From IMG/VR virus record IMGVR_UViG_3300037258_000590, positions 146,384-210,383 of that record: DNA of 64,000 bases. One strand, written 5' to 3'. Positions 28,974 through 56,273 of this stretch are shown here, piece by piece. Within the stretch, counting starts at the first letter, position 1, and every line of letters begins with the position of its first letter. The translations under genes and the position numbers were made by a program. The notes under the pieces are model-generated. The model made no database searches and had not been told where the DNA came from. It saw nothing but the letters and a program-made list of their open reading frames with translations.

Positions 28974-30143
28974 ACTCATACGAGACAGGAGACCGCCAGC
29001 ATGACTACGACGACTCCGGCTGAGATCAGGGAAAAGATCGATCGCGCATTGCGTGACCGTGCCATCGGCATACGGCACGAAGCCGCACTGCGCGGCAATT
29101 CCGGCGAGCACAACGCGGCGTACCGCGCTAGCCTGCGTGCCGAGGCGCAGCTCTGCGAAGACCTCGCGCACGTTGTAGCGCACACGGACCCGCAGCGGCT
29201 GGCGCAGGCACTGGATACGGGCAAGCCAGACCAGATTCCTGCGTGGCTGGCCTACGCGGGCGTGCCGCTGGACCAGATCCCGGACGACGGCCAGCGTGCC
29301 GCCGTGCGGGCGCATCGTGCAATCGCAGCAGACTCCGGGCCGTCATGAGGAAATCGCCGTACATCACGCGTGCCTTCCGGTCAGACGAACCAGGAGCCCC
29401 ACGGCCATGACTCAGGCAATTTCACCTAGCGCCATTACTCCTGGCCTGCCGTGCCGTACCTGCCAGGGAGCGTCGTTCTTCGATCGTGAGATAGGCAGCG
29501 CATGCCCGGCGTGCGGTGGCCGCGGCCAGGGTTCGGCGGTGCTGCTGCCATTCAGCTGCCTGGCTGAGATCACGCCCGGACTGGCGGGCTGGGCCTGGAC
29601 GATCCTGTGCGAGGGAACCCCAGTCGACGGCGGCGTCCGGGCCACTGAGGAAGCCGCCTTGGCGGCCGTAGCCGGATGGGCCGCAGCGGATAAGGCCCGG
29701 AAGGCAGACGCGATAACAGCGGAGATCCTGTCCGACGCTATCAGCGCACTCGGATTCACCGAGCAGGCGTTCGCTGCCGCGTTCGCGGCGGTGGCGTTGT
29801 CGAGTGCATTTCAAGAGGAGGAAAGCTGACATGACGGTCGAGCACCGTGAACACCGCGAGCTGAAGGTTAATCCTGAAGGGGTGGAGGATGTGCTGCCGC
29901 GTACGTTCCGGCTGGACGCATTCACGGCCGCGCAGCGCCGGGACGGCCGCCAGAGAACATGGCTGGACGAGACCCCGCGCCAGCGGACCACACTGGCTGA
30001 AGGGATCACCCGTCCGGAAGCCGTAGACCTGATCAGCCAGCTGGCGGACTGGCTGGCCTGGGACGGGAAAAACGGCTGACCCGCCGCTGGCAATGCCGGG
30101 CCAGCACGAGAACACGCAAGACACGCAGACAGGAGAAGCATTC

Positions 30144-31484
30144 ATGACGCTCGTTCACGCCAGCCGGCTAGACACCAGCCCGCCGGAATACACGGTAGAA
30201 GCCATGCTCCCGGATATGGGGGTGGGCTTCGGCTACGGCAATTCGTATACGGGCAAGACGATGGTGCTCGGGATCGAGCTGTGCCTGGCCATCGCCAACG
30301 GCGTGCCGTTTTTCGGCCGCGAAAGCGTATACGGGAGCGCCGCGTGGTGCCTCGGCGAGGGGCTGCCGGACGCGGGCGTGCGGATCAAGGCGCGGCTGAT
30401 CCGCGAAGCCCACGACCGGCAGCTCCAGGCGGCGCAGATCGCCAGGAAGGACGGTGACGCCGCGGCACAGGAGTGGCTGGCGGCGTTGCCGACGTACAGC
30501 GATGACCGGATGTTCGTCAAGACAACGGCATTCCAGGTCCCGTTCATCGCGGCTAACGAACCGCCGGAAGACCTGCAGCAGGCGGCCCGCGAACTGGGCC
30601 TGATCGAAGACCTTCGGCTGGTCGTGCTGGACACCGCACGCCGGTTCTCCAGCCTGTCGCTGTCGAACGGCACGACGAGCAACCGGTTCATGCTGGGCAT
30701 GAGCTGGCTGGCCGCGCAGCTGCAGTGCACGGTACTGGCCATCGCGCACCCGGTCAGCAAAGGCCGCGGCGAAGTAGGCCTGCCCGGTGACACCCTGTTC
30801 GGGGCATCGGACTTCGTATGGCGGTTCCAGTCGGCCGACGACAGCACGCCGGACGCGCCGGCCGCCATGATCATCGCGGAGAAGGTCAAGAGCGGGCCGC
30901 TATTCGACCCGATTCCGTATGAACTAGAGCGGATCAAGTGGCGTCAGCCGCCCACCGACCCGGAGACCGGCGAGGACATCCAAGGTGCCGAGCTGCTTGA
31001 GGTCAAGTCCGCTACAGTCCGGCAGCGTGAGAGCCGGCAGGCGCCTGTGAGTGCGATGCTGCTGCCGGGGATGACGCCCCGGAGGACAATGCGGCTGCCG
31101 CAGGCCGAACCGGTACCGCCGTCCAGGCCCCGGCGCCGGACCGGCATTCTCCCGGACACGTCGTTCCGCGCGGTGGTCGCGCCTGCCGAGACCGCGGTCC
31201 CGGACCCGGCCGCGGGCGCACTGGTCGCGGCCCTGATCTCGGGCGCGTGCCCGGAGAGCGCCTGCGCCGCGCTGCCTGGCGCGAGCTGCAACCCGGGCGT
31301 CCGGGGCAGCGGCGTCGTCATGCTGGACCGCGAGCCGCTGATAGCCGCGCACGTCGCGCGGATGGACGAGCGCATCACGGCCGGGACGGCCTCCCTGGAC
31401 GCGGTGCTGGCCCAGTTCCCCGAAGGCACGGCTCCGGCGCTGCTGGCCCAGCGTGCGGACGAGCTGACCGGAGTGCAGGCGTGA
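30144..31484 (+). CDS. AAA_25/RepA-like P-loop ATPase with C-terminal Zn-finger-like motif
   Basis: Walker A GNSYTGKT; Walker B LVVLDT; AIAHP.K; C-terminal CPESACAA.PG.SC..H..R. Confidence 0.7.
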   Translation: MTLVHASRLDTSPPEYTVEAMLPDMGVGFGYGNSYTGKTMVLGIELCLAIANGVPFFGRESVYGSAAWCLGEGLPDAGVRIKARLIREAHDRQLQAAQIARKDGDAAAQEWLAALPTYSDDRMFVKTTAFQVPFIAANEPPEDLQQAARELGLIEDLRLVVLDTARRFSSLSLSNGTTSNRFMLGMSWLAAQLQCTVLAIAHPVSKGRGEVGLPGDTLFGASDFVWRFQSADDSTPDAPAAMIIAEKVKSGPLFDPIPYELERIKWRQPPTDPETGEDIQGAELLEVKSATVRQRESRQAPVSAMLLPGMTPRRTMRLPQAEPVPPSRPRRRTGILPDTSFRAVVAPAETAVPDPAAGALVAALISGACPESACAALPGASCNPGVRGSGVVMLDREPLIAAHVARMDERITAGTASLDAVLAQFPEGTAPALLAQRADELTGVQA

Positions 31485-33212: not shown

Positions 33213-35285
33213 ATGAGCAAGGTCTGCTACGAACAGCAGCGGTTCACCGATGCCGCCGGGGACGTCATCACCCAGGCTGAGGCGTTCTGCGCGCAATACG
33301 CAGCCCAGGGCTGGGAGCTAACGCTGCGCCAGCTGTACTACCGGTTCATCGCCACCAACACTTTCCCGGACAGCCGGACCGATCCGGTGTCGGGCACTAA
33401 GAACACCGAGCGGAATTACAAGTGGCTGGGCGACCTGGTATCCAAGGCACGGGTGGGCGGCCTGATCGACTGGCGGCATATCACCGACAGGGGACGGGGG
33501 ACAGCAGGCGGAGACAGCGGCTGGCAAAGCCCGGAGTCGATGCTGCGCAGCGCAGCGCGCGGCTACGGGATCACCCACTGGGACGGCCAGCCAGAGTACA
33601 TCGAGTGCCTGCCACCTGATCAGGTGATCATCACCAGCGAGGGCGTAAAACCAGTCATCAAAGTGGAAGCCGGCGATCTCGTCCTGACCGGCAAAGGCCG
33701 GTTCCGCCCGGTGACCCGGGTCCTGGCACACGAATACGACGGACCGATGATGACGATCCGCGCAACCGGGCTGCTTCCGTTCCAGGTAACCGCCAACCAC
33801 CCGGTCTGGACAGCTCACTACGACACCTCCAAGCCGGGCTGCAAAGGCGCGACCCGGAAATTCAGCGCAGAGGGATTCGACCGGGCCGACAGCTTGCGCC
33901 CGTTTGACCTGCTAGCCGTCCCGGCACTATCCGAAACCCGCGCAGTCGGACCGGTCACCATGCGGACCAGCGGTAGCCGGGCACGGGTACTCACCATGCC
34001 GTGGAACACCAGCTTGCAAGCACTCATCGGCCTGTACCTGGCCGAAGGCTGCATCCGCAAGGACGGCCGCACCGTCCAGTTCACCATCGGCATGCACGAG
34101 CCTGAGCACTGGACCGCACTGACAAGCTGGGCCGAGTCCGCCGGTGTCAGCACAAGCACTGCGGTGGACGGCGGCGCGCGACAGGTCTACCTGTATTCAG
34201 CCAGCCTGGCTGAATGGCTGCGCGAGCAATTCGACTGCGGCGCGCGGAACAAGCGCATCCCGCGCTGGCTGCTGGAAGCCCCCAGCGAGGAGCAGATGGA
34301 GGTCCTGCGCTGGTACTACCGGGGCGACGGGACCGTGGACTACAGCACCAGCAACAGCCTGGTCGCCACCACCCGCAGCCTGCACCTAGCCCACCAGGTC
34401 GCGCTGATCCTGATCCGCAACGGCTACCTGCCCCGCGTGCAGAGCACCCAAGACCACGGCGATCCCCGGTACAGCATGGCGGTAAGCGGCCAGTCCGGTG
34501 CGGACCTGATGCGGCGCTGGGGTCACGAACCCCGCTCGCGAACCTACTCGTACAACCACATGCGAGCCGGAGACGGCCACATGGCCGCGCCCGTCCGGTC
34601 AGTCACGACCGAGCATTACTCCGGGCTGGTCTACAACCTGGAAGTAGCGGACGACCACACTTACTGTGTGTCAGCGACCGTACACAATTGTTGGGTGGAG
34701 AAGGACGCACTATCCCAGATTATCGACCGGGCAGCCACGCGGTGGGACGTCACCTCATTCGCGTGCAAGGGCTCGCCGTCTACTTCAGCGATGCACGACG
34801 CGGCCTTGCGCCTGCGCGAGCAGGAACGTAACGGCAAGAAAACCACGGTCATCTACCTGGGTGACCATGACCCGACCGGGATCGACATCAGCCGTGACGT
34901 ACAGGCCCGGCTAACCCTGTTCCGTTCGAGTGCGTACGTGGACCGGATCGCGCTGAACATGGATCAGGTACTGGAGCTGAACCCGCCGCCGAGCCCGGTC
35001 AAGGTCACCGACAGCCGGACTAACGGCTATGTCGAGACTTTCGGCACAGAGGAGTGCTGGGAGCTGGACGCGATCGAGCCGGCTGACCTGGACACCCTGA
35101 TCGAAACAGCCATCTTGTCCCACCTGGACCTGGACCTGCGCCAGGCCCGGCTGGACCGCGAGGAGCAGGAGCGGGCCATCCTGACCGCCATTTACGAGAA
35201 CTTCAGCCTTGTCCGCGGGTACCTGCGCGATGAAGGCCTGGCAGGCGATGAAGACGGCAACTACGACGATGACGAGGACAGCTGA
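33213..35285 (+). CDS. TopoVI-A/Spo11-like wHTH+TOPRIM protein interrupted by an intein
   Basis: LTLRQLYYR; W..I.DR.R; extein YIE|CWVEKDAL; YLGDHDP.G; WELDA. Confidence 0.8.
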   Translation: MSKVCYEQQRFTDAAGDVITQAEAFCAQYAAQGWELTLRQLYYRFIATNTFPDSRTDPVSGTKNTERNYKWLGDLVSKARVGGLIDWRHITDRGRGTAGGDSGWQSPESMLRSAARGYGITHWDGQPEYIECLPPDQVIITSEGVKPVIKVEAGDLVLTGKGRFRPVTRVLAHEYDGPMMTIRATGLLPFQVTANHPVWTAHYDTSKPGCKGATRKFSAEGFDRADSLRPFDLLAVPALSETRAVGPVTMRTSGSRARVLTMPWNTSLQALIGLYLAEGCIRKDGRTVQFTIGMHEPEHWTALTSWAESAGVSTSTAVDGGARQVYLYSASLAEWLREQFDCGARNKRIPRWLLEAPSEEQMEVLRWYYRGDGTVDYSTSNSLVATTRSLHLAHQVALILIRNGYLPRVQSTQDHGDPRYSMAVSGQSGADLMRRWGHEPRSRTYSYNHMRAGDGHMAAPVRSVTTEHYSGLVYNLEVADDHTYCVSATVHNCWVEKDALSQIIDRAATRWDVTSFACKGSPSTSAMHDAALRLREQERNGKKTTVIYLGDHDPTGIDISRDVQARLTLFRSSAYVDRIALNMDQVLELNPPPSPVKVTDSRTNGYVETFGTEECWELDAIEPADLDTLIETAILSHLDLDLRQARLDREEQERAILTAIYENFSLVRGYLRDEGLAGDEDGNYDDDEDS
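33606..34688 (+). mobile_element. intein with LAGLIDADG homing endonuclease (361 aa)
   Basis: starts CLPPDQ; block B VTANHP; LIGLYLAEG and LRWYYRGDG; ends VYNLEVADDHTY...VHN followed by Cys. Confidence 0.92.
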
Positions 35286-41104: not shown

Positions 41105-42529
41105 ATGATACTGAAACGTAAGATCACCGGCCCGGACGGAGACCGGGTACTCACGGTCATCCGCGCGGCGGGCGGGCGGCCGGTGCTGGCCGGCGGCTGC
41201 GTGCGGGATGCGATCCTGCACCCGGGGCGGCCTGCGAAAGACATCGACATCGAGGTTTTCGGCCCCGCGGACTTCGAGCGGCTGGCGTACGCGCTCACTG
41301 AGGCCGGATTCGCGCCGGGCCTGACCGGAGTCAGCTTCAGCGTCATCAAGATCCGCAGCAGCGGCACTGAGTTCGATATTGCTCTCGCGCGCCAGGATTC
41401 CAAGACCGGGCCGGGCCACCGCGGGTTCGACGTCATTCCCGATGGGCTTCTCGGGTTCGCAGCGGCGAGTGCGCGCCGGGACTTCACGGTCAACGCGCTG
41501 ATGGCCGACCCGGATACCGGTGAGGTGACCGATTGCCACCACGGACTGGATGACCTGCGCGCGGGCGTCCTGCGGCATACCTCAGGCGCATTCACGGAAG
41601 ACCCGCTGCGGGTGCTGCGGGCGGTGCAGTTCGCGGCCCGGTTCGGTTTCCGGCTGCACCCGGAGACCGCGGCGCTGTGCGGCAGCATCTCGGGGGCGTT
41701 CACCGAGCTGGCCGCCGAGCGGATATGGGGTGAGTTCATCAAGCTGGGCACCCTGGGCACCGACATCAGCGCCGGGCTGCGGGTGCTGGCCGAGACCGGG
41801 TGGGAGCGGCATTTCCCGCCTCTTGGCGCGCTGCACGGCGTGCCGCAGGAGCCGCAGTGGCATCCCGAAGGAGATGTCTGGACCCATTCCGGGCTGGCGG
41901 CCGGCCAGGCGGCCCGGCTGGCTGATGAAGCGGGCGTGACGGGCACTGACCGGCTGGTCCTGGTCCTGGCGGCGCTAGCCCACGATTTCGGGAAGGTCAC
42001 GACTACCCGGACGGTGAAAGGCCGGATCATCTCGCACGGTCACGCAGCGGCCGGGGTCGCGCCGGCGGTCGCGTTCCTGCGCGGCGCCGGGTGCCCGCAT
42101 GCTATAGCCGCCCGGGTGGCCACGCTGGTCCGGGAGCACATGAACTGTGCCGGGCGCCCCTCGAAAACAGTGGTCCGCAGGATGGCCCGGCGGCTCGGCG
42201 GCACGTCGCTGACTGAGCTGGCCCTGGTGATCGGCGCTGATCATGCGGGCCGCGGAGACCCGGGCGCGCCGAACCCGGCCCTGGCGTGGCTGGAGATGGC
42301 GGCCGGGCTGGGGGTGACCGGGCAGCCGGCGAGAAGACTGCTGGCCGGGCGGCACCTGATCGCGGCCGGGATGACGCCGGGCCCGGCGTTCGGGCCTGTC
42401 CTGGCCGCCGCCCTGACCGCGCAGGATGACGGCGAATTCACCGATGAGGCCGGCGCGCTGGCGTGGCTGACCCAGCTGACCGGGCGCACAGCACAGACCG
42501 CGCAAGCACGAGAAGGGAATTTCTCATGA
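41105..42529 (+). CDS. cca: class II tRNA nucleotidyltransferase (CCA-adding-like) with HD domain
   Basis: GGCVRD, DIDIE, RRDFTVNAL, EDPLRVLRAVQF, ERIWGE, HPEGDVWTH, HDFGK. Confidence 0.88.
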   Translation: MILKRKITGPDGDRVLTVIRAAGGRPVLAGGCVRDAILHPGRPAKDIDIEVFGPADFERLAYALTEAGFAPGLTGVSFSVIKIRSSGTEFDIALARQDSKTGPGHRGFDVIPDGLLGFAAASARRDFTVNALMADPDTGEVTDCHHGLDDLRAGVLRHTSGAFTEDPLRVLRAVQFAARFGFRLHPETAALCGSISGAFTELAAERIWGEFIKLGTLGTDISAGLRVLAETGWERHFPPLGALHGVPQEPQWHPEGDVWTHSGLAAGQAARLADEAGVTGTDRLVLVLAALAHDFGKVTTTRTVKGRIISHGHAAAGVAPAVAFLRGAGCPHAIAARVATLVREHMNCAGRPSKTVVRRMARRLGGTSLTELALVIGADHAGRGDPGAPNPALAWLEMAAGLGVTGQPARRLLAGRHLIAAGMTPGPAFGPVLAAALTAQDDGEFTDEAGALAWLTQLTGRTAQTAQAREGNFS

Positions 42530-48310: not shown

Positions 48311-48646
48311 TCATCCTGCCAGCGCCCGCCCGGCCCGGCGAGCGCGCATCAGCGGCGGCACCCAGTCGCGGCCGTCCTGCTCGGCGCAAGCCCGGCCCTG
48401 GTTGCATTCCAGGCACGCGAGCACGACAGCGTGACCCTGCGTGCGCTGCGGCCGGCCGGCAGGCCACGCGATCCGCGAGTGCAGGTGATCCCGGGTAGCC
48501 AGCTCCGGCGGGTACCGGGACATCAGCCGCAATGCCGCCTGCGAGATCATGACGACAAGCCGCCCGCACCAGAAACAGTACGGGTAACGCTGGTACAGCC
48601 GCCGCAGGACAGCGCTGCCCTGCCGGCCCCTGGTCATGCCGGTCAC
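48311..48646 (-). CDS. HNH-like nuclease
   Basis: CFWCG...ATRDHL...VLACLECNQ.R; GTGA overlap. Confidence 0.65.
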   Translation of the reverse strand: MTGMTRGRQGSAVLRRLYQRYPYCFWCGRLVVMISQAALRLMSRYPPELATRDHLHSRIAWPAGRPQRTQGHAVVLACLECNQGRACAEQDGRDWVPPLMRARRAGRALAG

Positions 48647-50025
48647 CACCCCACGACGGTCAGCTGCTTCACGGCCCGGGTGACGGCGGTGTACAGCCAC
48701 CGGCTGCGGATCTCGCCCGGGGGCGGCCAGCTCTCCTCGATAACCAGCACGTTATCCGCGGCACTGCCCTGAGATTTGTGGGTCGTAAGGGCGTAACCCC
48801 AGTCGAACAAGGCGATACTGCGGTCGCGGATCGAACGGGCGGCTTCCGGCAGCTGGCCGAACGGGGCGGCGGCGACGGCGCCTTCCCAGGACAGGTCCTG
48901 GCCGTCCATGTCGACCGCCAGCTGCCAGGCGTCCGTCCCGTTCACGCAGGCGGCGCCGCGGTTCTCGCGGACGGTGCCGCGCTGGCCGTTGAACAGGCCT
49001 TCGCCGTAATTGTTGCGCAGGCAGATCACGACATCGCCGGGCGCCGGCGGCCCGCTGCGGCCGTGCCAGGCGCGCATCGCGTCGTTGTGCCAGGCCCGGG
49101 TGGCGTTGGTGGCGCACAGGATCATGTTCGCGTCGCCCGGGTGCAGGCCCTCGTGCCCCATCCGGTCCGGCGTGGTCTTCACGCAGGACGGCCCGTACCA
49201 GCCGCCCGGGATGTACCCGTGCTCACGGGCCCAGCGGGACATGTTCAGGATCGCCATGCCGTCCGGGTCGGCGGCGCTCTGCCGGTGGATTTCCTCCAGC
49301 CGCAGGTCCGGGCTGGACATCAGGCTGAACGCGGACTGGACGGGCGGCAGCTGGCCGTGGTCGCCGATGGCCAGGACGGGCACGCCGTGGCCGGTCAGGT
49401 CGGCCCACAGCTGCTCCGGGATCATGGACGCCTCGTCGGCGACCACCAGGTCGAGCCCGGCCAGGGGGTCGGGTGCCGGGGTGAAGCTGACCTGCTGCCG
49501 GGCCGGGCACGGCGGCCTGATTCCCGGCATGTCTTTGCGCAGGCGGTGCGCGTCGCACGCCGTTTCCCGGCCGCGCAGCTCCAGGCCGGATTCGGCGCAC
49601 AGCGTCATCACCGCCGGGCGGTACAGCAGCCGGTGCAGCGTGGACACCACCTCGGCCCGCGCGCCCAGGCCGCCGAGCGAGCCCCGCAGGACATGCACGG
49701 CCTTGCCGGTGTACGCGGTGTACGCGATCTTCGCGCGGTTGAGCACCGCGGGCAGCAGCCCGGCCACGGTGGTCTTCCCCGTGCCGGCCAGGCCGCCCAG
49801 GATCAGCGGGACGCTGCCGCCGTCCTGGTGCCACGCGGCGATCTCGCCGAGCGCGTCACGCTGGCCGGCCGACAGCTGCCGCAGCCGCTCCGCCTGCCCC
49901 CGGCTGAGCGTAACCGGCCACGCGCCCCAGCCGCGGAGCATGTCCCGCACAGCCGGGTCGGTATCCGGCGGCGGCAGCCGCAGCTCGCTGTCCGCCGCGG
50001 GGGCGGCCTCGGCAGGCGCGGTCAT
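48643..50025 (-). CDS. RecD/Dda-like SF1B helicase
   Basis: GLAGTGKTT, DEASM, GDHGQLPPV, YALTTHKSQGS, WLYTAVTRA. Confidence 0.88.
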   Translation of the reverse strand: MTAPAEAAPAADSELRLPPPDTDPAVRDMLRGWGAWPVTLSRGQAERLRQLSAGQRDALGEIAAWHQDGGSVPLILGGLAGTGKTTVAGLLPAVLNRAKIAYTAYTGKAVHVLRGSLGGLGARAEVVSTLHRLLYRPAVMTLCAESGLELRGRETACDAHRLRKDMPGIRPPCPARQQVSFTPAPDPLAGLDLVVADEASMIPEQLWADLTGHGVPVLAIGDHGQLPPVQSAFSLMSSPDLRLEEIHRQSAADPDGMAILNMSRWAREHGYIPGGWYGPSCVKTTPDRMGHEGLHPGDANMILCATNATRAWHNDAMRAWHGRSGPPAPGDVVICLRNNYGEGLFNGQRGTVRENRGAACVNGTDAWQLAVDMDGQDLSWEGAVAAAPFGQLPEAARSIRDRSIALFDWGYALTTHKSQGSAADNVLVIEESWPPPGEIRSRWLYTAVTRAVKQLTVVGW

Positions 50026-50056
50026 GACGGGCTCCAGGGCGCCTCGGCGGGCGCGG

Positions 50057-50596
50057 TCATGACGGGCTCCAGGGCGCCAGCAGCGCGTCGTCCGGGACCC
50101 GGTGACGGCCGCGGGCCAGCGGGTGCACCGGGCTGCCGTCACTGGTCGTGCCCAGGCACGCCAGCGTGACCCCGGCGGCGGTAAGCACGGCGGTCACTTC
50201 CCGGGCCCTGGCGGCGGCCAGCGGGTGCGCACCCCAGCAGGCGACGACCGGGCCGTCCGCTGCGGCCAGGCCGGCCAGCCATGCGTCGTTGTCCGGGCCT
50301 GCCGGGTCGGTGCCCGCCTTCAGGGCCGCCCGCAGCGCCGCCGGGTGCGGGGAGCGCAGCGCGTACAGGTTGAGCACGCAGATGCCGCGGCAGCCCTCCC
50401 GGCGCGCGAACGCGCACATCCGGCGGATCGTCGGGTCATCGGTGCTCGCGTCGGCGGTGGACGGGTTCAGGCCGATCCAGGCCATCACCGGCCCCCAGGT
50501 ACCCCAGCGGCGGTTCAGCACGTACCGGTACAGGCGGTCGTCACTAAGCACGGTTTCCGCCGCGCATCCGGGCGCCGGGCAGCTGGCCGCGGTCAT
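50057..50596 (-). CDS. DUF1643 domain protein
   Basis: YRYVL.R.W...IGLNPSTAD...DDPTIRR...NLYA.R...GPDND. Confidence 0.82.
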   Translation of the reverse strand: MTAASCPAPGCAAETVLSDDRLYRYVLNRRWGTWGPVMAWIGLNPSTADASTDDPTIRRMCAFARREGCRGICVLNLYALRSPHPAALRAALKAGTDPAGPDNDAWLAGLAAADGPVVACWGAHPLAAARAREVTAVLTAAGVTLACLGTTSDGSPVHPLARGRHRVPDDALLAPWSPS

Positions 50597-50800
50597 GACG
50601 GCAGCCCGTCCCCGCGTGGCGCCGGCGCGTCGCGCTGCACGCCGGCTGCGGCCACGATCTCCGGCGGGGTCATCGCCGGTCCTCCGCGTGCACGGCCAGG
50701 CACCGCGCATTGCGCGCGTACGGGATCCAGCCGGCCAGCACCGCGCGCCAGCGGCAGACGCAGCCTCGCGGCACGCATTCGTCCCAGGTACGCACGGCCA

Positions 50801-51383
50801 TCACTGACCTCCTGTCAGGTCTCTTACCGTATGCAACACCAACAGCGTACGCGCTAATCCCGCGCCAGCCCGGCTGCGGCTGCTGCCGGGCCACTGGCGC
50901 CTGGCGAACAGCTCCAGGTACGGGCCGGGACTGACTTGCTCGGCAAGCCTGCAGAACTCCTCCGGCTTGCGCGAATGACTCCCGCGCGGCCACTCGTACC
51001 AGCTGGGCATCGCCGCGCTGGCCGGAACCATCGGCTTGCCGCGCGTGGCCAGCAGGCAATGCTCGGTGTTGTTCCGCACGTAGTAGCCCATCCCCGGCCC
51101 GCGCTTGCACCAGGTGATGAGCGTCATCGGGGTGAAGCCCCAGGCGCGGGCAACGTCATACGCGGAGCCGAGCAGCCGGTTGACGCCCCAGATCCACAGG
51201 TGCGCGTCATCGGCAGCCAGTTCCCTGACAGGCAGCGCGGCAATGTCGTCCACGGCCATCACCGGGTAGTGCCGTTGCGGCTTGCCCCGGTGGTACGTGC
51301 TGCGCCCGTGCATGGCCGGCCACCGGCGGGTCAGCCAGTATGCACCGGTACCCGCCAGGCGGAGACTGCGGCATCGAGATCAT
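50801..51383 (-). pseudogene. MT-A70 family adenine methyltransferase, frameshifted
   Basis: YRCILADPP in one frame; HYPVM...HLWIW...TEHCLLA.RG...HSRKP...YLELFAR in another; one extra G inside DPPW. Confidence 0.75.
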
Positions 51384-52645
51384 GAGCTGTCCGGCCACGC
51401 CTGGAACGGCTCAACGGCCTTGGCTTCGATCGGCACGCCGAAGATGTCTTCGAACTGCTGGTTGTGCATGCATTCCTGCAGTACCAGGCGCGCCTCGGCG
51501 GCTTCGGCAGCGGGCACGAACATGAACAGCTCGTCATGGATGGGCAGAATCGGGTACCTACCCCACCGGGTCTGGCCCCAGCGCAGTGCACCATCCACGA
51601 GGATTTCCCGGGCCGTTCCTTGTATACCATAATTACCAGCTGCGTGCGGACGGCCTTCCGGCAGCCATATAGTCCGGCCAGAATACGCTTTAAAAGCCCG
51701 GTTACCGGCTTTTACGTATGCGCGCATCTGCTGGTCCCAGTCGGTGAACACCGGGGCTATCTGCGCGAACGCGTAATGAATGGCGGCCCCGGATTCAACC
51801 GGAATCCCGACCTGCCGGGCACCTGATTCTGCTCCCCCGCCGAACATTTTACTGAAGATCACGCGTTTGCAGTTATACCGGTCTTCGACAGTGGCGTCTG
51901 GGCCGAATGCCATTCTCGCGGCCATCCAGTGCAGGCCCTTCTGGTTTTTCCCGCAAGCCTGCGGGTCGCACGGGTCGTGCCCGCAAGCCTGGCACCGGGT
52001 GGACAGCTCGGCGGCGAGGAGACCCATGTCACCGGACAGGGCAGCCCCGACCCGGATTTCCACGCCTGCGAAGTCGGCACTGATCCCGGCCATGGGCACG
52101 CCCCAGGGGCTGGTGTGCTCGTCGTCGGCGGTGACGCAGGCCCGGATACCGCCCTGGCGGCTGAACTGCATGCCGTTCGGACGTCGGCAGCTACATCGGC
52201 CAGTGTCGGCTTCCAGTGTGTAAACGGTAGGGCGCATCCGGCTGTCGCCGCGTTCGCACAGCAGGTTCAGCGGTTCGAGCAGCAGCCCCAGGGTCGTGAC
52301 GTCATGCCGGTATTCCAGGATCTGGCGCAGCAGCTCGGCGTGCTCGTAACCGGGATCGCCGGCCAGGCGTTCCAGTTCGCCCTTAGCCGCGGACAGGTTG
52401 CCGGCTTTGGTCGTGCCGAGCGGGACGCCGAGCGCGACCAGGGCGGCGGGAACCTCTTTGGTGGATGACGGATTGCTGATGGCGGGACACAGCTGGGTGA
52501 CCCGGGCCTGGGCGGTGTCCCGGGCGGCGGCGTACTCGGCGATCTTGGCGCCGGTGTGGTGATGATCGAGCCTGAACCCGGTCAGGGCGACCCGGGCGCA
52601 CATGGCCTGGAACTGCCGTTCACGCCGGAGCACGTCAACGCCCAT
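51380..52645 (-). CDS. DNA polymerase family A, polymerase domain only
   Basis: TGR.S...PN.MQ; motif A ADFAGVEIR; motif B R...K...F..MFGGG; NY.IQGTA; motif C IHDEL; own GGAG SD. Confidence 0.85.
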   Translation of the reverse strand: MGVDVLRRERQFQAMCARVALTGFRLDHHHTGAKIAEYAAARDTAQARVTQLCPAISNPSSTKEVPAALVALGVPLGTTKAGNLSAAKGELERLAGDPGYEHAELLRQILEYRHDVTTLGLLLEPLNLLCERGDSRMRPTVYTLEADTGRCSCRRPNGMQFSRQGGIRACVTADDEHTSPWGVPMAGISADFAGVEIRVGAALSGDMGLLAAELSTRCQACGHDPCDPQACGKNQKGLHWMAARMAFGPDATVEDRYNCKRVIFSKMFGGGAESGARQVGIPVESGAAIHYAFAQIAPVFTDWDQQMRAYVKAGNRAFKAYSGRTIWLPEGRPHAAGNYGIQGTAREILVDGALRWGQTRWGRYPILPIHDELFMFVPAAEAAEARLVLQECMHNQQFEDIFGVPIEAKAVEPFQAWPDSS

Positions 52646-52658
52646 AACTGGTCTCCGT

Positions 52659-55600
52659 TCAGCCGGCCGGGGGACGGGGGAGCACGCGGAGCACGGCGGC
52701 CAGGTCCAGGACGTCGGATCCGGCGTAGCGCAGGAACGTCTCGCAGTTCTTGCGGACCTGGGCCCAGCCGGAACGCTCCAGCGGGGTCTGCGGCTTGGTT
52801 TCCACGAGCCAGCCGCCGGTTTTGAACAGGGCGTTCTTGGCGACTTCAGCGGGCGGACTGACGGCATACGGGCCGAGCAGGTCGGCGGAGAGTTTCTTCA
52901 GCTGGCTTTCGTCCGATCCTGCCAGGGCCGGATCGGCGAGCTTGGCGATAAGCACGGAGTCCACCATCCGGTCCCACAGCGAGTCCGCGTCGGCCAGGCC
53001 GGCCCAGGCCAGCGGGATCAGGTCGGCGATTGCGGAATGGGCGTGCAGCGTGCGTGCCTGGGCGAGCAGCCCGCGGACCGCTTCGGCTTGCGCCGGGTCA
53101 TCGGGGTCGAAGACGGCGGCCACGTGCTCGCCGCCCGCCTGGATCAGCCGGAGCTTGTATTCGACGCGGCCCGGCCCGAATCCGGTGTGCTCCACGTCCA
53201 CGCACAGCCCGTCCAGGTACTGGCTAGCCAGCAGGACCGCCTCATCCGGCGTGCACGGCACCACGAGCGGCGGGCCGCCTGCCGGGTCACGCGCCACGAT
53301 GACCGGCAGCTGGTGCACCGGGCCTTCAGCGGCGGCCAGCTTCGCGGCTTTTTCCGCGGCCTTGCGAAGCTGGGCGCGGGCCTTAGCCGTTCCGGCGGCG
53401 GGCTCGGTAACCGCCGGTGAAGTAACAGCCAGTGACGACCCCGGGTTTTCCGCCGCGGGGGGGTCCGGCACCGGCTCTATGGAGGGATGGGGGGTATGGG
53501 GGGTTGAGCCCTTACCCCCCTGCATGTGCGTGTGTGTGTGCGTGTGTGTGTGCGCGCGTGTGTGCGCTATAAAGGTTGACTTACCTTCCATACCCTCCAT
53601 ATGGATAGTTTCATGGATGGTTTGACCTGCAGTATTTCCGTTCATGGATGGTTGAGGAGAAGGTCCTGAACCATCCATGAACCCTCCATTTTCAGGTTCA
53701 GACCCTCCATGCGGACGAGCAGAACCACCGCTCGCGCCGCTCAGCGCGGCCGGTCCCGGCATGAAAACCTGCGGAGGCCTGATCCGGAGGAATCTGTAGT
53801 TCGCATCCGTCCGTTTATATGGGGGGTAGCCCAGTTCGGTCAGCCGCCGTCCCCAGCGTGTTTCCGAGGGCATCGTCGCCGGATTCACCTGCATGCTGCG
53901 GCAACTCTCCGTGAACGCTCGGTAGAGATCGCGGCTCCTGGTGCCGCGCCCGGAGTCCTCGCATTCCTCCCGCAGCCAGCTCAGCACGAGATCCTGACTG
54001 GTCATGATCTCCAGGGCTGCCTGGGCCGCAGAATCTGGCGCAGCCTCGTTCCCGGCGCTGTGCGGGTCGGCCAGCCAGCGGGCGGCCTCGATCATCATGA
54101 GGGCCAGCACGCCGGGGGCCTCAGCCCGCCACGGGGCCCCGTGCTCCGCGCCGATCGCGGCCCTGGCCGCCCGGACCGCGCCCGGGTTGCCGTCGCACGG
54201 GATCAGCCGGACCCGGCGGCGGATCGCCGCGTCGGTCAGCACCGGCTCGTGCTCTGGGTTCGCGGTCAGGATCAGCGTGTGCGTGGTGGGAAACGTGATC
54301 GGGTTCTCCCCCATCCGGTTGCCGGTCAGGTCGGCCCCGCCGGTAATCTGCTTCAGCCGCTCGGTAGCCAGCGACCCGGTGCGCGGCGCCTCATCGATGA
54401 ATGACAGCCGCCGCCCGCGCAGCGCGTACACGATCGAGGCGTGCGACCGGTCAGCCGGGGCGAGCAGCCGGGCGTCGGCCACGTGGGCGTAGCTGCCCAG
54501 CACCGACATGAGCAGCATGAGGATGCTGGTCTTGCCTTTATCCGTATCGCCGAGCAGGATGGGCAGCGCCTTGTCTGAATAGCCGGTGAACGAGATGGCC
54601 AGGATGCGCAGCGCCCAGGCCCGCACCGCGGCATCTGGCCAGACCGCGGCCAGGAACGTCTCCCACAGCGGGACCGGCCGCAGTTCCGGGACGACGCCCG
54701 CGCTGTGCAGGTGCGGCGTCCCCGGATCGGTCCACCGCGAGACCGCCGGACCCTGGTCCGAGTTCCGCAGGTCGTACGGGCGCCCGCCCGCCCACAGGAT
54801 CTCCCGTTCGGTGTCCAGCGCGGCCAGCTCCACCGCGGAGGGGTGCTGCCCGGCGGCGACCTGCGCGTTCATTTTCCCGGCGACCGCGTTGGCCGAGGTG
54901 TTGCTCATGAACCGCTTGCGCCGCTCGGCCTGCAGCCGCGGCGGGCTGCCCTGGGCCGCATCCGGGTCGCCGGGCGGCATGAGCACGCTCACCAGGTCGA
55001 CGCCCCATTTGGCCAGGTCGCCTTTGATCACGTCCCATTTACCCGGGCCGCGCCTGATCCACGCGCCGGCGTCGGGAGCGTAGCGCAGTACCGGCCAGGT
55101 CCGGCCCAGCACCTCACGGCCCAGCATCCCGTCCAGCCCGGACTGCGGGTCGAACGGGGTGATGCCGATGCCGTCGTCGCCCCACGGTGACCAGGACTGC
55201 GGCTCCTCGGGCGGCGGGGGCAGCTCGTCGTCATCGGTGCCCGGCGGGACGTCCGGGGCAGGCGGCGCGAACCGGGGCAGCCCGCGCCCGAACACCCGGC
55301 ACGGATCGGTTGCCTGCGGGACCGCGCCGTGAGCGGTAACCGCCTTGCGCGCGGCGGTGGTGATCATCTCCGTGAACTCGGCGTGCCGGTCCCGGCCTTC
55401 CCCGGCGGTCATCTCGTTCCACAGCGTTTCCAGCTGCGCGATGACAGTGCCGTAGCCGCCGTGGCCTTCGGCGCTCAGCTGGACCAGCTCGTAGATGCTC
55501 CTGGTCATCAGGTCGTGCCGGGAACCCGGCTGCACGGCCGTGACCTCAGCCAGCGCCGCCGCCGCCGCGTGCGCCATGTCGGTGCACACCTGCCCGGCTT

Positions 55601-56273
55601 CGGCGTTCAGGTAATCCAGCAGCTGCCCGGCTTCTCCGGGGCTGGCCGCGGCCGGGCTCGGTGCCGCGGCGCCCTCAGCCAGGCCGGCGACCCAGCTTTC
55701 CGGCAGGGCGGCCAGCTCACCCGGGCGGGGAACCCTGCCTTCCAGCCGTACGCCGTCCGGGCCGTACCACGCGTACGCCGTGCCGGTCTCGTAGTGCGGT
55801 GACGGCGCGACGACGGCGTAGCGGTGATGCCGCTGGATGATCTCCGCATCAGGGCCGAGCTGGGCGGCGTAGCGCCGGGGCGGCACCCGGAAGAACCAGA
55901 TGCGGCTGGGCTGGCCCTGACCCCGCGCGGTGGAGGAGTACGTCGGCGGCAGCACTCCCCACTCGGTGATCCTGGCCGCCAGGGTGGCCGCGCCGTGCTT
56001 CGCGGCGCCGCCCTTGACGTACTCATCGACGTCGATGCCGATCACGCCGTCCGGCATCCGGAGCGCGATCGAGGCACCTGGCTGCTGTTCCGCCCAGTCC
56101 GCGATGTCTTCGGGTGCGGTGTCGCGGCCGTCCGCCCCGGTGAAGCCGCCGGGCGGCGGGAACTTGGCTTCCGGCGGCACCGGGATCACGCATTTCCACC
56201 CGGCCAGGAAATAATCCGCGCACGCGCTTTCGTATACTCCGGCTGGCGGGGCGAGGTTCTGAGCGTCGTTCAC
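52659..56273 (-). CDS. PrimPol + D5-like SF3 helicase + 3'-5' exonuclease fusion
   Basis: N-terminal IGIDVD primase motif; central GDTDKGKT, FIDE, LKQITGG; C-terminal CVDVEHTG, AHSAIAD, YAGSD exo motifs. Confidence 0.82.
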   Translation of the reverse strand: MNDAQNLAPPAGVYESACADYFLAGWKCVIPVPPEAKFPPPGGFTGADGRDTAPEDIADWAEQQPGASIALRMPDGVIGIDVDEYVKGGAAKHGAATLAARITEWGVLPPTYSSTARGQGQPSRIWFFRVPPRRYAAQLGPDAEIIQRHHRYAVVAPSPHYETGTAYAWYGPDGVRLEGRVPRPGELAALPESWVAGLAEGAAAPSPAAASPGEAGQLLDYLNAEAGQVCTDMAHAAAAALAEVTAVQPGSRHDLMTRSIYELVQLSAEGHGGYGTVIAQLETLWNEMTAGEGRDRHAEFTEMITTAARKAVTAHGAVPQATDPCRVFGRGLPRFAPPAPDVPPGTDDDELPPPPEEPQSWSPWGDDGIGITPFDPQSGLDGMLGREVLGRTWPVLRYAPDAGAWIRRGPGKWDVIKGDLAKWGVDLVSVLMPPGDPDAAQGSPPRLQAERRKRFMSNTSANAVAGKMNAQVAAGQHPSAVELAALDTEREILWAGGRPYDLRNSDQGPAVSRWTDPGTPHLHSAGVVPELRPVPLWETFLAAVWPDAAVRAWALRILAISFTGYSDKALPILLGDTDKGKTSILMLLMSVLGSYAHVADARLLAPADRSHASIVYALRGRRLSFIDEAPRTGSLATERLKQITGGADLTGNRMGENPITFPTTHTLILTANPEHEPVLTDAAIRRRVRLIPCDGNPGAVRAARAAIGAEHGAPWRAEAPGVLALMMIEAARWLADPHSAGNEAAPDSAAQAALEIMTSQDLVLSWLREECEDSGRGTRSRDLYRAFTESCRSMQVNPATMPSETRWGRRLTELGYPPYKRTDANYRFLRIRPPQVFMPGPAALSGASGGSARPHGGSEPENGGFMDGSGPSPQPSMNGNTAGQTIHETIHMEGMEGKSTFIAHTRAHTHTHTHTHMQGGKGSTPHTPHPSIEPVPDPPAAENPGSSLAVTSPAVTEPAAGTAKARAQLRKAAEKAAKLAAAEGPVHQLPVIVARDPAGGPPLVVPCTPDEAVLLASQYLDGLCVDVEHTGFGPGRVEYKLRLIQAGGEHVAAVFDPDDPAQAEAVRGLLAQARTLHAHSAIADLIPLAWAGLADADSLWDRMVDSVLIAKLADPALAGSDESQLKKLSADLLGPYAVSPPAEVAKNALFKTGGWLVETKPQTPLERSGWAQVRKNCETFLRYAGSDVLDLAAVLRVLPRPPAG
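53478..53711. promoter_or_regulatory. putative replication origin: iteron-like repeats in a low-GC patch
   Basis: about 9 CC(A/C/T)TCCAT / ATGGA(T/G)GG units in both orientations; 13-bp inverted repeat 53641-53653/53669-53681; (TG)n tract. Confidence 0.5.

What the first reader, a model, noticed from the sequence alone, without database searches (positions are those of the whole stretch)
51380..56273. Split replisome: primase-helicase-exonuclease fusion plus a stand-alone PolA polymerase domain
Seen: the 1204-aa ORF carries PrimPol, SF3 helicase and the proofreading exonuclease. It stops 13 nt before an ORF with only PolA motifs A, B and C and its own GGAG SD. The polymerase frame is open upstream to at least 52867, so a frameshift could also yield one ~1600-aa polypeptide. 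Motif B has F/MFGGG where YG is usual. Inference: fission of an all-in-one replicase at the exonuclease/polymerase boundary.
Basis: partly seen in the sequence, partly recalled or inferred. Interest (0 to 1): 0.6.

Follow-up and report, generated by a model that had tools for sequence, protein, structure and literature searches.

The report
Phage replicase split between proofreader and polymerase
A 210-kb soil phage splits its DNA-copying enzyme into two adjacent genes, a primase-helicase-proofreader and a bare polymerase, whereas most relatives make one giant protein; this natural split is real and has arisen more than once.

Summary
On the minus strand, a 1204-aa ORF (52659..56273) carries a Prim-Pol primase, a P4/D5-type SF3 helicase and a C-terminal DEDDy 3'-5' exonuclease. 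It ends in TGA. Thirteen nt later, after a GGAG, a 421-aa ORF (51380..52645) starts, and it is only the PolA polymerase domain.

The split is not an assembly error. Contigs from three soil metagenomes of three studies carry the same junction, with no indel listed there.

About 53 related protein clusters are single ~1550-1650-aa primase-helicase-exonuclease-polymerase proteins, the closest at about 74-76% identity in the polymerase. Their linker pattern (LPxPxxAVLxRER) is shared by all outgroups. The window and one relative (L003) interrupt it with short insertions of 28 and 17 nt that bring a stop and a start codon.

A separate, older clade of 38 stand-alone ~400-aa polymerases is cut at the same linker. 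There, other genes lie between the two halves.

A complex prediction puts the exonuclease domain and the polymerase together (0.89 against a best control of 0.43).

A programmed frameshift is not supported.

Exo/pol gene fission in PolA was reported once, in T7-like cyanophages in 2023. This is a new variant in which the exonuclease stays on the helicase.

The parts
52659..56273 (-). ORF1, 1204 aa: PrimPol primase, SF3 helicase and DEDDy 3'-5' exonuclease in one polypeptide (GTG start, TGA stop at 52661-52659)
   Evidence: PHROG 1156 'DNA primase', E 8e-95 over residues 9-832
55719..56216 (-). Prim-Pol (archaeo-eukaryotic primase) domain, residues 20-185; DxD motif IGIDVDE at 56022-56042
   Evidence: Pfam PF09250, E 3.3e-20, 73.6 bits, over the cut-off; motif coordinates
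53886..54680 (-). P4/D5-type SF3 helicase NTPase, residues about 532-796; Walker A 54525-54551, Walker B 54387-54407, motif C 54258-54275
   Evidence: DUF5906 PF19263, 32.9 bits, over the cut-off; TIGR01613, E 1.9e-27, below NCBI's cut-off; motifs
53525..53566 (.). TG-rich 12-nt tandem repeat inside the helicase-exonuclease linker; it codes the His-Thr run
   Evidence: the read tool skipped 53516-53573 as a repeat
52662..53321 (-). DEDDy 3'-5' exonuclease domain, residues about 985-1204; Exo I 53181-53204, Exo II 53019-53045, Exo III 52704-52727
   Evidence: invariant D, E, D, Y, D in 38 homologues; AF2 model pLDDT 93.4; Foldseek hits to NrnC/diDNase and to the exonuclease domains of G20c Pol I, DpoZ, apPOL and T7 polymerase; tblastn to the exonuclease part of actinophage Pol I
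52646..52658 (-). 13-nt intergenic spacer with the Shine-Dalgarno GGAG (52656-52653), 7 nt before the ATG
51380..52645 (-). ORF2, 421 aa: stand-alone PolA polymerase domain; motif A 52052-52075, motif B 51833-51880, motif C 51530-51544
   Evidence: PF00476, E 4.4e-28, profile positions 10-372 of 381; PHROG 17; motifs. It is the only DNA polymerase found among families A, B and C in the 210-kb genome

Best explanation
This is a genuine, stably inherited gene fission of an all-in-one phage replicase (PrimPol primase, SF3 helicase, proofreading exonuclease, PolA polymerase). A short insertion in the exonuclease-polymerase linker brought a stop codon, a Shine-Dalgarno sequence and a start codon.

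The phage therefore makes two proteins. One is a primase-helicase that carries the proofreading exonuclease at its C-terminus. The other is a free 421-aa polymerase subunit, probably translated by coupling or re-initiation 13 nt after the stop.

I infer that the polymerase docks non-covalently on the exonuclease domain through the same interface that the fused relatives have within one chain. The active replicase would then be reassembled on the helicase, much as Pol III alpha binds epsilon or PolD DP2 binds DP1.

Shown: the genes, the domains, the catalytic residues, the reality of the junction, and the fused and split relatives. Inferred: translation of ORF2 from its own start, the docking, and the activities.
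For: Anatomy.

The junction is real. Contigs from runs X1 (depth 51, possibly the source), X2 and X3 come from three samples and three studies. They span 52645-52665 and no indel is listed there.

Fused relatives:
- L002 encodes one 1951-aa ORF, 74% identical in the polymerase, with an extra insert in motif B.
- 53 fused clusters were seen in all.

Split relatives:
- L003 has a 1232-aa ORF and a 409-aa polymerase that overlap by 1 nt.
- L004 and L005 have two or three genes between the halves.
- A clade of 38 stand-alone ~400-aa polymerases exists.

All cuts fall in the same linker. The linker pattern of the fused forms is shared by the outgroups. The split junctions are 28-nt and 17-nt insertions into it.

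This is the only polymerase of families A, B or C found in a genome that CheckV rates as complete.

Complex prediction of exonuclease domain plus polymerase gave 0.89 against a best control of 0.43. That mark was reached by 51 of 78 solved complexes and 2 of 108 mismatched pairs. The runs agree in at least 98% of contacts and the partner's pLDDT is at least 88.
Against: There are no expression or protein data: no RNA run holds the locus.

The runs are kept as contigs, which drop rare variants, so a minority fused allele cannot be excluded.

The complex score may come from the model's memory of intact PolA structures. It shows likeness to a Klenow-type interface, not binding.

The number of fissions near the window is unresolved. 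The careful tree puts the window as sister to the 20 close fused forms (90/88) with L003 outside. The AU test does not reject window plus L003 as one clade (p 0.374).
Confidence: 0.8

Rival explanations
1. Programmed +1 ribosomal frameshifting near the end of ORF1 makes a single ~1600-aa fused replicase, alone or alongside the two separate products.
For: ORF2 lies in the +1 frame and that frame is open for 74 codons upstream. C-runs lie just before the stop.
Against: Off-frame ORFs of this length are ubiquitous at about 70% G+C, and the overlap translates to R/P/S filler. The GGAG lies after the stop, correctly spaced for the ATG, not before a shift site. L003 has the other frame offset, from a 17-nt insertion with a stop-start overlap. 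L004 and L005 have whole genes between the halves. No shift signal is therefore conserved.
Confidence: 0.05
2. A sequencing or assembly indel artificially splits one gene.
For: A one-base change of frame separates the ORFs, and homopolymer C-runs are nearby.
Against: Compared with the fused relatives the junction differs by a 28-nt insertion that holds the stop, the SD and the ATG, not by one base. Contigs from three runs of three studies agree, one of them at depth 51. The relative L003 is split at the same place.
Confidence: 0.02
3. A recent disabling mutation: the replicase gene is broken and the polymerase part is no longer made, or is on its way to loss.
For: None directly. The window's lineage is one of few split members within its close clade.
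Against: A start codon with a well-spaced SD follows the stop. All catalytic motifs of both halves are intact. The branch is not elongated (0.19 against a median of 0.20). It is the only DNA polymerase found among families A, B and C. The phage occurs in several soil samples. L003, at about 73% identity, keeps the split.
Confidence: 0.05
4. Reverse direction: the split state is ancestral for the window's clade, and the 20 close fused forms arose by secondary re-fusion.
For: In the careful tree L003 and the window branch off successively below a 100/100 clade of fused forms. Both split forms place the start codon four codons before the conserved VL, which would fit one shared split ancestor.
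Against: The linker of the close fused forms matches the pattern in distant fused and exo-pol outgroups. A re-fusion would not be expected to recreate it. Monophyly of window plus L003 is not rejected (AU p 0.374), and that needs only one fission and no re-fusion.
Confidence: 0.08

Closest known systems
S-SBP1-like split PolA of T7-like cyanophages (Czernecki et al. 2023, Nucleic Acids Res 51:4488, PMC10201439)
   Same: The gene is split exactly between the 3'-5' exonuclease and the polymerase domain of a phage family A polymerase. The two genes are adjacent. Intact close relatives exist. The predicted complex resembles the uninterrupted enzyme. The authors likewise rejected constitutive frameshifting.
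   Different: That case lies in the T7-like subfamily, which has Tyr at motif B position 3 according to the paper. It arose by a 1-nt deletion and leaves a small free exonuclease protein. Here the PolA belongs to a different, actinophage-related group with Phe at that position. The junction is a 17-28-nt insertion. The exonuclease remains fused to a PrimPol-SF3 helicase. The split recurs in a second, older clade with intervening genes.
Pas55 of Actinoplanes phage phiAsp2, an all-in-one primase-SF3 helicase-PolA fusion noted by Kazlauskas et al. 2016 (PMC4889955)
   Same: Primase, helicase and family A polymerase sit in one polypeptide of an actinophage. This is the same kind of protein as the fused relatives of the window.
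   Different: Pas55 (1415 aa) has a DUF3854/TOPRIM-type N-terminus, not Prim-Pol. It shares only 31% identity over 280 residues of the polymerase with the fused relative P0005. It is not split.
PREX of apicoplasts, and AEP-PolA fusions in the 'Hot Spring 1' PolA cluster (as described in PMC10201439)
   Same: They are polyproteins that join primase, helicase, exonuclease and PolA, and some bacterial members have an N-terminal AEP primase-polymerase.
   Different: PREX uses a TOPRIM primase and a DnaB-like helicase. The apPOL structure appears only as a distant fold match of the exonuclease domain. Membership of that cluster was not tested here.
Pol III core (alpha plus epsilon) and PolD (DP2 plus DP1)
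   Same: Polymerase and proofreading exonuclease are separate subunits that act as one enzyme. This is established knowledge, and the PolD analogy is also drawn in PMC10201439.
   Different: These are unrelated polymerase families. The likeness is functional only.
Pol I of Arthrobacter, Microbacterium and Mycobacterium phages (called D29-like PolA in PMC10201439)
   Same: These are the nearest cultured-phage relatives of both halves. The polymerase is 26-29% identical over about 97% of its length. The exonuclease domain is 28-33% identical to the N-terminal part of those Pol I genes.
   Different: Those enzymes are single exo-pol proteins of about 600 aa without primase or helicase. Identity is low. 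No cultured phage in the collection has a close relative.

Membership tests
Family A DNA polymerase, polymerase domain (PF00476) | Profile match over Pfam's gathering score that covers thumb, palm and fingers | tested here: met
   98.7 bits against a cut-off of 34.3, profile positions 10-372 of 381
Family A DNA polymerase, polymerase domain (PF00476) | Catalytic motifs A (D..E), B (R...K...F...Y/F-G) and C (HDE) | tested here: met
   DFAGVEIR, RYNCKRVIFSKMFGGG and PIHDE. The Y766-equivalent is F, as in 75 of 181 relatives
Canonical PolA (Klenow-like) architecture | 3'-5' exonuclease domain and polymerase domain in one polypeptide | tested here: not met
   A stop codon and a 13-nt spacer lie between them, confirmed in independent contigs
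DEDDy 3'-5' exonuclease (DnaQ-like, PF01612) | Profile match over Pfam's gathering score | tested here: not met
   18.5 bits against a cut-off of 23.6, E 0.0018 on residues 960-1204. Several homologues carry a precomputed PF01612 hit
DEDDy 3'-5' exonuclease (DnaQ-like, PF01612) | Exo I DxE, Exo II D and Exo III Yx3D residues | tested here: met
   D1026, E1028, D1084, Y1183 and D1187 are invariant in 38 sequences
DEDDy 3'-5' exonuclease (DnaQ-like, PF01612) | RNase H-like exonuclease fold | tested here: met
   Model pLDDT 93.4. Foldseek probability is 1.00 to diDNase/NrnC, G20c Pol I, DpoZ, apPOL, T7 polymerase, RNase D and WRN exonuclease, with TM by target of 0.5-0.58 for the single-domain nucleases
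Prim-Pol (archaeo-eukaryotic primase, PF09250) | Profile match over the gathering score and a DxD metal-binding motif | tested here: met
   73.6 bits against a cut-off of 22.8; IGIDVDE
P4/D5-type SF3 helicase | Walker A, Walker B and SF3 motif C within a P4-family primase C-terminal or DUF5906 domain | tested here: met
   DUF5906 at 32.9 bits, over the 27.6 cut-off. TIGR01613 gives E 1.9e-27 but is below NCBI's 108.7-bit cut-off. Helicase activity was not tested
S-SBP1-like split PolA (T7-like cluster of PMC10201439) | Polymerase belongs to the T7-like subfamily (Tyr at motif B position 3) | tested here: not met
   Phe at that position in 176 of 181 family members, the window included. The nearest cultured relatives are actinophage Pol I. 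This is the same kind of event but a different family
Programmed ribosomal frameshift gene pair | Shift site and frame offset conserved among relatives | tested here: not met
   The window is offset by +1 (28-nt insertion). L003 has the other offset (17-nt insertion). L004 and L005 have genes between the halves

The most novel reading that the evidence does not exclude
Large soil actinophages carry a so far undescribed family of all-in-one PrimPol-SF3 helicase-exonuclease-PolA replicases. This family has been cut at least twice, independently, at the same linker, and each time the proofreading exonuclease was left on the hexameric primase-helicase.

On this reading the exonuclease domain is the docking site that recruits free polymerase subunits to the helicase. 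Fission would then be selected because it uncouples polymerase dosage or exchange from the helicase. Nature would have supplied matched fused and split versions of one replisome for testing what covalent helicase-polymerase coupling is worth.
Probability: 0.35. Interest if true: 0.7.

Novelty: new variant of a known kind. Interest (0 to 1): 0.55.

Why it matters
The paper that first reported separation of the proofreading and polymerase domains of a family A polymerase into two genes (PMC10201439) called it an oddity. That paper also states that PolAs need the exonuclease domain for stability.

This locus shows the same cut in an unrelated PolA lineage. It recurs in at least two clades and is stable even when other genes separate the halves. 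It also has a new twist: the exonuclease stays attached to the primase-helicase.

Together with roughly 50 fused relatives at graded distances, this gives a natural series. Such a series could be used to test how polymerase, proofreader and helicase are coupled in a minimal replisome. It could also yield compact replication enzymes for biotechnology.

Tried and rejected
- Megablast of the locus against cultured phages found nothing.
- phmmer of the exonuclease domain against PDB sequences found nothing. The profile of 38 homologues gave only marginal NrnC hits at the Exo III motif (E 0.03). The fold search settled the question.
- The first FastTree of polymerase domains alone nested the window inside the fused forms and suggested up to 11 'polymerase-only' changes. 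Inspection showed that most scattered 'polymerase-only' and 'exo-pol' rows in that clade come from contigs of 1-3 kb. They start at the contig edge or at an internal Met, for example P0103 at base 6 of a 1286-nt contig. I did not count them as splits.
- The strain SNPs from the read lay-out are too few (18) for a dN/dS statement.
- Pfam did not recognise the ~340-aa insert in motif B of relative P0003 as an intein. Only its boundaries (it starts with Cys and ends GN before Ser) suggest one.
- The first complex-prediction run did not complete. The repeat ran.
- The large representative search was not used, because the word search already gave ample relatives.
Full report
**Setting**

The window is the last 64 kb of a 210,383-bp IMG/VR virus record with direct terminal repeats, rated 100% complete by CheckV. 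G+C is 65-73% and there are no tRNA genes in the window. Neighbouring genes on the same strand include an MT-A70 methyltransferase, a DUF1643 protein, a RecD-like helicase and a GH25 endolysin with a PG_binding_1 domain. Relatives keep the order replicase, then small genes, then endolysin. The composition, the nearest cultured relatives and two named homologues (Amycolatopsis, Trebonia) point to an actinobacterial host. That host assignment is inference.

**The observation**

ORF1 (52659..56273, minus strand, 1204 aa) holds three domains:
- A Prim-Pol domain at residues 20-185 (PF09250, E 3.3e-20).
- A DUF5906 NTPase at 574-681, over Pfam's cut-off. PHROG 1156 'DNA primase' matches residues 9-832 at E 8e-95. 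TIGR01613, the P4-family primase C-terminal domain, gives E 1.9e-27. Walker A, Walker B and SF3 motif C can be read directly.
- A C-terminal exonuclease in the last ~220 residues. Pfam's PF01612 sees it only weakly (E 0.0018, below the gathering score), and single-sequence or profile searches of the PDB gave nothing usable.

Three other lines establish the exonuclease:
- In an alignment of 38 homologous domains the residues of Exo I (D1026, E1028), Exo II (D1084) and Exo III (Y1183, D1187) are invariant.
- An AlphaFold2 model from that alignment has mean pLDDT 93.4 and pTM 0.90.
- Its Foldseek matches in the PDB are dominated by DEDDy exonucleases: diDNase/NrnC, RNase D, WRN and Nibbler, and the exonuclease domains of phage G20c Pol I, DpoZ, apicoplast apPOL and T7 polymerase.

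In addition, tblastn of the domain hits the N-terminal part of 'DNA polymerase I' genes of Arthrobacter, Microbacterium and Mycobacterium phages at 28-33% identity.

ORF1 ends with TGA at 52661-52659. A 13-nt spacer holds GGAG 7 nt before the ATG at 52645. From there ORF2 (421 aa, to 51380) matches PF00476 over profile positions 10-372 of 381. It has motifs A, B and C and nothing else. The listed 495-aa ORF that starts at 52867 is the same frame running back through ORF1. Its first 74 codons give R/P/S-rich filler, and such off-frame ORFs are commonplace here (69 of at least 60 aa in 10 kb).

**Is the split real?**

Logan contigs of four soil metagenomes from different samples and studies hold the locus. 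Three contigs span the junction:
- Run X1: a 12.5-kb contig at depth 51, identical to the window. It may be the source of this DNA.
- Run X2: a 3.2-kb contig over 51699-54911.
- Run X3: a 1.0-kb contig over 52350-53380, with no gaps.

No indel is listed anywhere in the stretch. The X2 contig is 12 nt shorter than the window over its span. The position of that gap is not printed. Twelve is the period of the tandem repeat at 53525-53566, which the tool skipped as a repeat. A 12-nt change could not merge the two frames in any case. Contigs drop rare variants, so a minority allele is not excluded.

**Relatives**

A scan of IMG/VR with ORF2 found one locus, L002 on a 164-kb contig. There a single 1951-aa ORF runs from the Prim-Pol domain to the end of the polymerase. 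It is longer than 1204 + 421 aa because of a ~340-aa insert in motif B.

The word search with the exonuclease region gave 101 proteins and the search with ORF2 gave 152. I sorted them by domain coordinates into these architectures:
- 53 clusters are fused forms of ~1450-1970 aa. Their N-termini are Prim-Pol or D5_N, followed by DUF5906, the exonuclease and PolA.
- Many are exo-pol proteins of ~600-880 aa without primase or helicase.
- A few are fusions of a DnaB-like AAA_25 domain with exo-pol.
- Six lack the polymerase and end with the exonuclease, like ORF1: P0001, P0004, P0026, P0030, P0040 and P0072.
- About 40 are stand-alone polymerases of ~400 aa.

Genomic context shows that the last two classes belong together:
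- In L003 a 1232-aa ORF is followed, with a 1-nt stop-start overlap, by a 409-aa polymerase.
- In L004 the 1215-aa ORF and the 401-aa polymerase are separated by two genes.
- In L005 the two halves are separated by three genes.

The cut is always in the same place. The exonuclease ends a few residues after the last helix (AAVxRVL...), and the polymerase begins a few residues before the conserved LxRER motif.

**Direction and number of events**

In a FastTree of 184 polymerase domains, 38 of the stand-alone polymerases form one deep clade with 100% local support. It includes the polymerases of L004 and of the P0072 contig. The window falls in another clade that is dominated by fused forms.

A careful IQ-TREE of exonuclease plus polymerase (37 rows, 640 columns) gives the following:
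- The 20 close fused forms are a 100/100 clade.
- The window is its sister (90/88).
- L003 comes next (98/91).
- An exo-pol clade follows.
- The old split clade (100/100) groups with other fused forms on the far side.

The AU test does not reject window plus L003 as one clade (p 0.374).

The linker of the close fused forms (LPRPDEAVLARER) follows the pattern seen in all outgroups (LPxPxxAVLxRER). At the DNA level the window and L003 differ from fused relatives by insertions of 28 nt and 17 nt in that linker, and these carry the stop and the ATG.

I conclude that the fused linker is ancestral and that the split states are derived. There were at least two fissions in the family: the old clade, and the window/L003 lineage. 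Whether the window and L003 share one event is open. Both place the start codon four codons before the conserved VL, which hints at one event. This last point is inference.

**Mechanism**

PF00476, PF00136 and PF07733 searches of the whole phage genome find only this one polymerase. ORF2 is therefore most likely the replicative polymerase.

The short spacer with a correctly spaced GGAG fits independent or coupled initiation. This is inference, with no expression data behind it.

A complex prediction of residues 985-1204 of ORF1 with ORF2 gave these results:
- Score 0.89 against a best control of 0.43.
- That mark was reached by 51 of 78 solved complexes and by 2 of 108 mismatched pairs.
- The runs agree in at least 98% of contacts, and the partner's pLDDT is at least 88.
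- The interface uses the first ~20 residues of the polymerase and the Exo II helix region.

Because intact PolA structures are solved, this pass may come from memory. It shows that the two halves still look like the two sides of a Klenow-type interface, not that they bind.

**The frameshift idea**

ORF2 is in the +1 frame, but several points count against a programmed frameshift:
- The GGAG lies after the stop, not before a shift site, and I see no known +1 shift motif.
- L003 has the other frame offset.
- In the old clade other genes intervene.

Czernecki et al. reached the same conclusion for their split PolA.

**Motif B**

F at the Y766-equivalent position occurs in 75 of 181 family members and Y in 105. 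The F762-equivalent is F in 176.

**Comparison with the literature**

- Czernecki et al. [quoted passage not shown] It arose through a frameshift mutation, with a predicted complex like the intact enzyme. They also note AEP-PolA fusions in another cluster.
- Kazlauskas et al. 2016 (PMC4889955) list only two primase-helicase-polymerase fusions among cultured dsDNA viruses. One is Pas55 of Actinoplanes phage phiAsp2.
- Pas55 proved to be a different fusion, with DUF3854 plus PolA and 31% identity over 280 residues of the polymerase.
- I found no description of the PrimPol-SF3-exonuclease-PolA family or of its split form in four literature searches and look-ups. That is absence from a limited library, not proof.

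**Verdict**

It is a new variant of a recently described kind of event, with the exonuclease retained on the primase-helicase and recurrence across clades. It is moderately interesting to people who work on replisome architecture and polymerase evolution.

Noticed in passing
window 53525-53566 (in ORF1, helicase-exonuclease linker): A TG-rich 12-nt tandem repeat codes a His-Thr run. The contig of run X2 is 12 nt shorter over 51699-54911, possibly here, which would be an in-frame length polymorphism between strains. The surrounding linker has lower G+C than its flanks.
   Followed up: partly
L002:2410-8265 (protein P0003, residues about 1470-1810); also P0008 and P0022: The fused relatives of 1920-1971 aa carry a ~340-aa insert in the polymerase. 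In P0003 it sits inside motif B, starts with Cys and ends GN before Ser, like an intein with a homing-endonuclease-like middle. Pfam did not recognise it.
   Followed up: partly
window 33213-35285 (+): A 690-aa ORF has a LAGLIDADG_3 hit in its middle. It may be another intein-bearing or homing-endonuclease gene.
   Followed up: no
window 41105-42529 (+): A 474-aa ORF has a PolyA_pol head domain and an HD domain, like a CCA-adding enzyme, in a window without any tRNA gene.
   Followed up: no
window 30093-31484 (+) and 48643-50142 (-): Further helicase-like genes lie in the window: an AAA_25 protein (RepA/DnaB-like) and a RecD-like AAA_30/UvrD_C_2 protein just downstream of the replicase genes. 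The phage therefore has candidate helicases besides the SF3 domain of ORF1.
   Followed up: no
window 50057-51313 (-): An MT-A70 methyltransferase (170 aa) and a DUF1643 protein (217 aa) lie directly after the polymerase gene. DUF1643 also lies near the fused replicase in L006.
   Followed up: no
family-wide (proteins P0017-P0019, P0023, P0066 and P0071, P0096, P0097): The exo-pol module is combined with different front ends in different relatives: Prim-Pol, D5_N without a Prim-Pol hit, or a DnaB-like AAA_25 domain. This suggests repeated domain shuffling at the N-terminus as well. P0066 lies on a 7.47-Mb contig labelled Amycolatopsis cynarae.
   Followed up: partly
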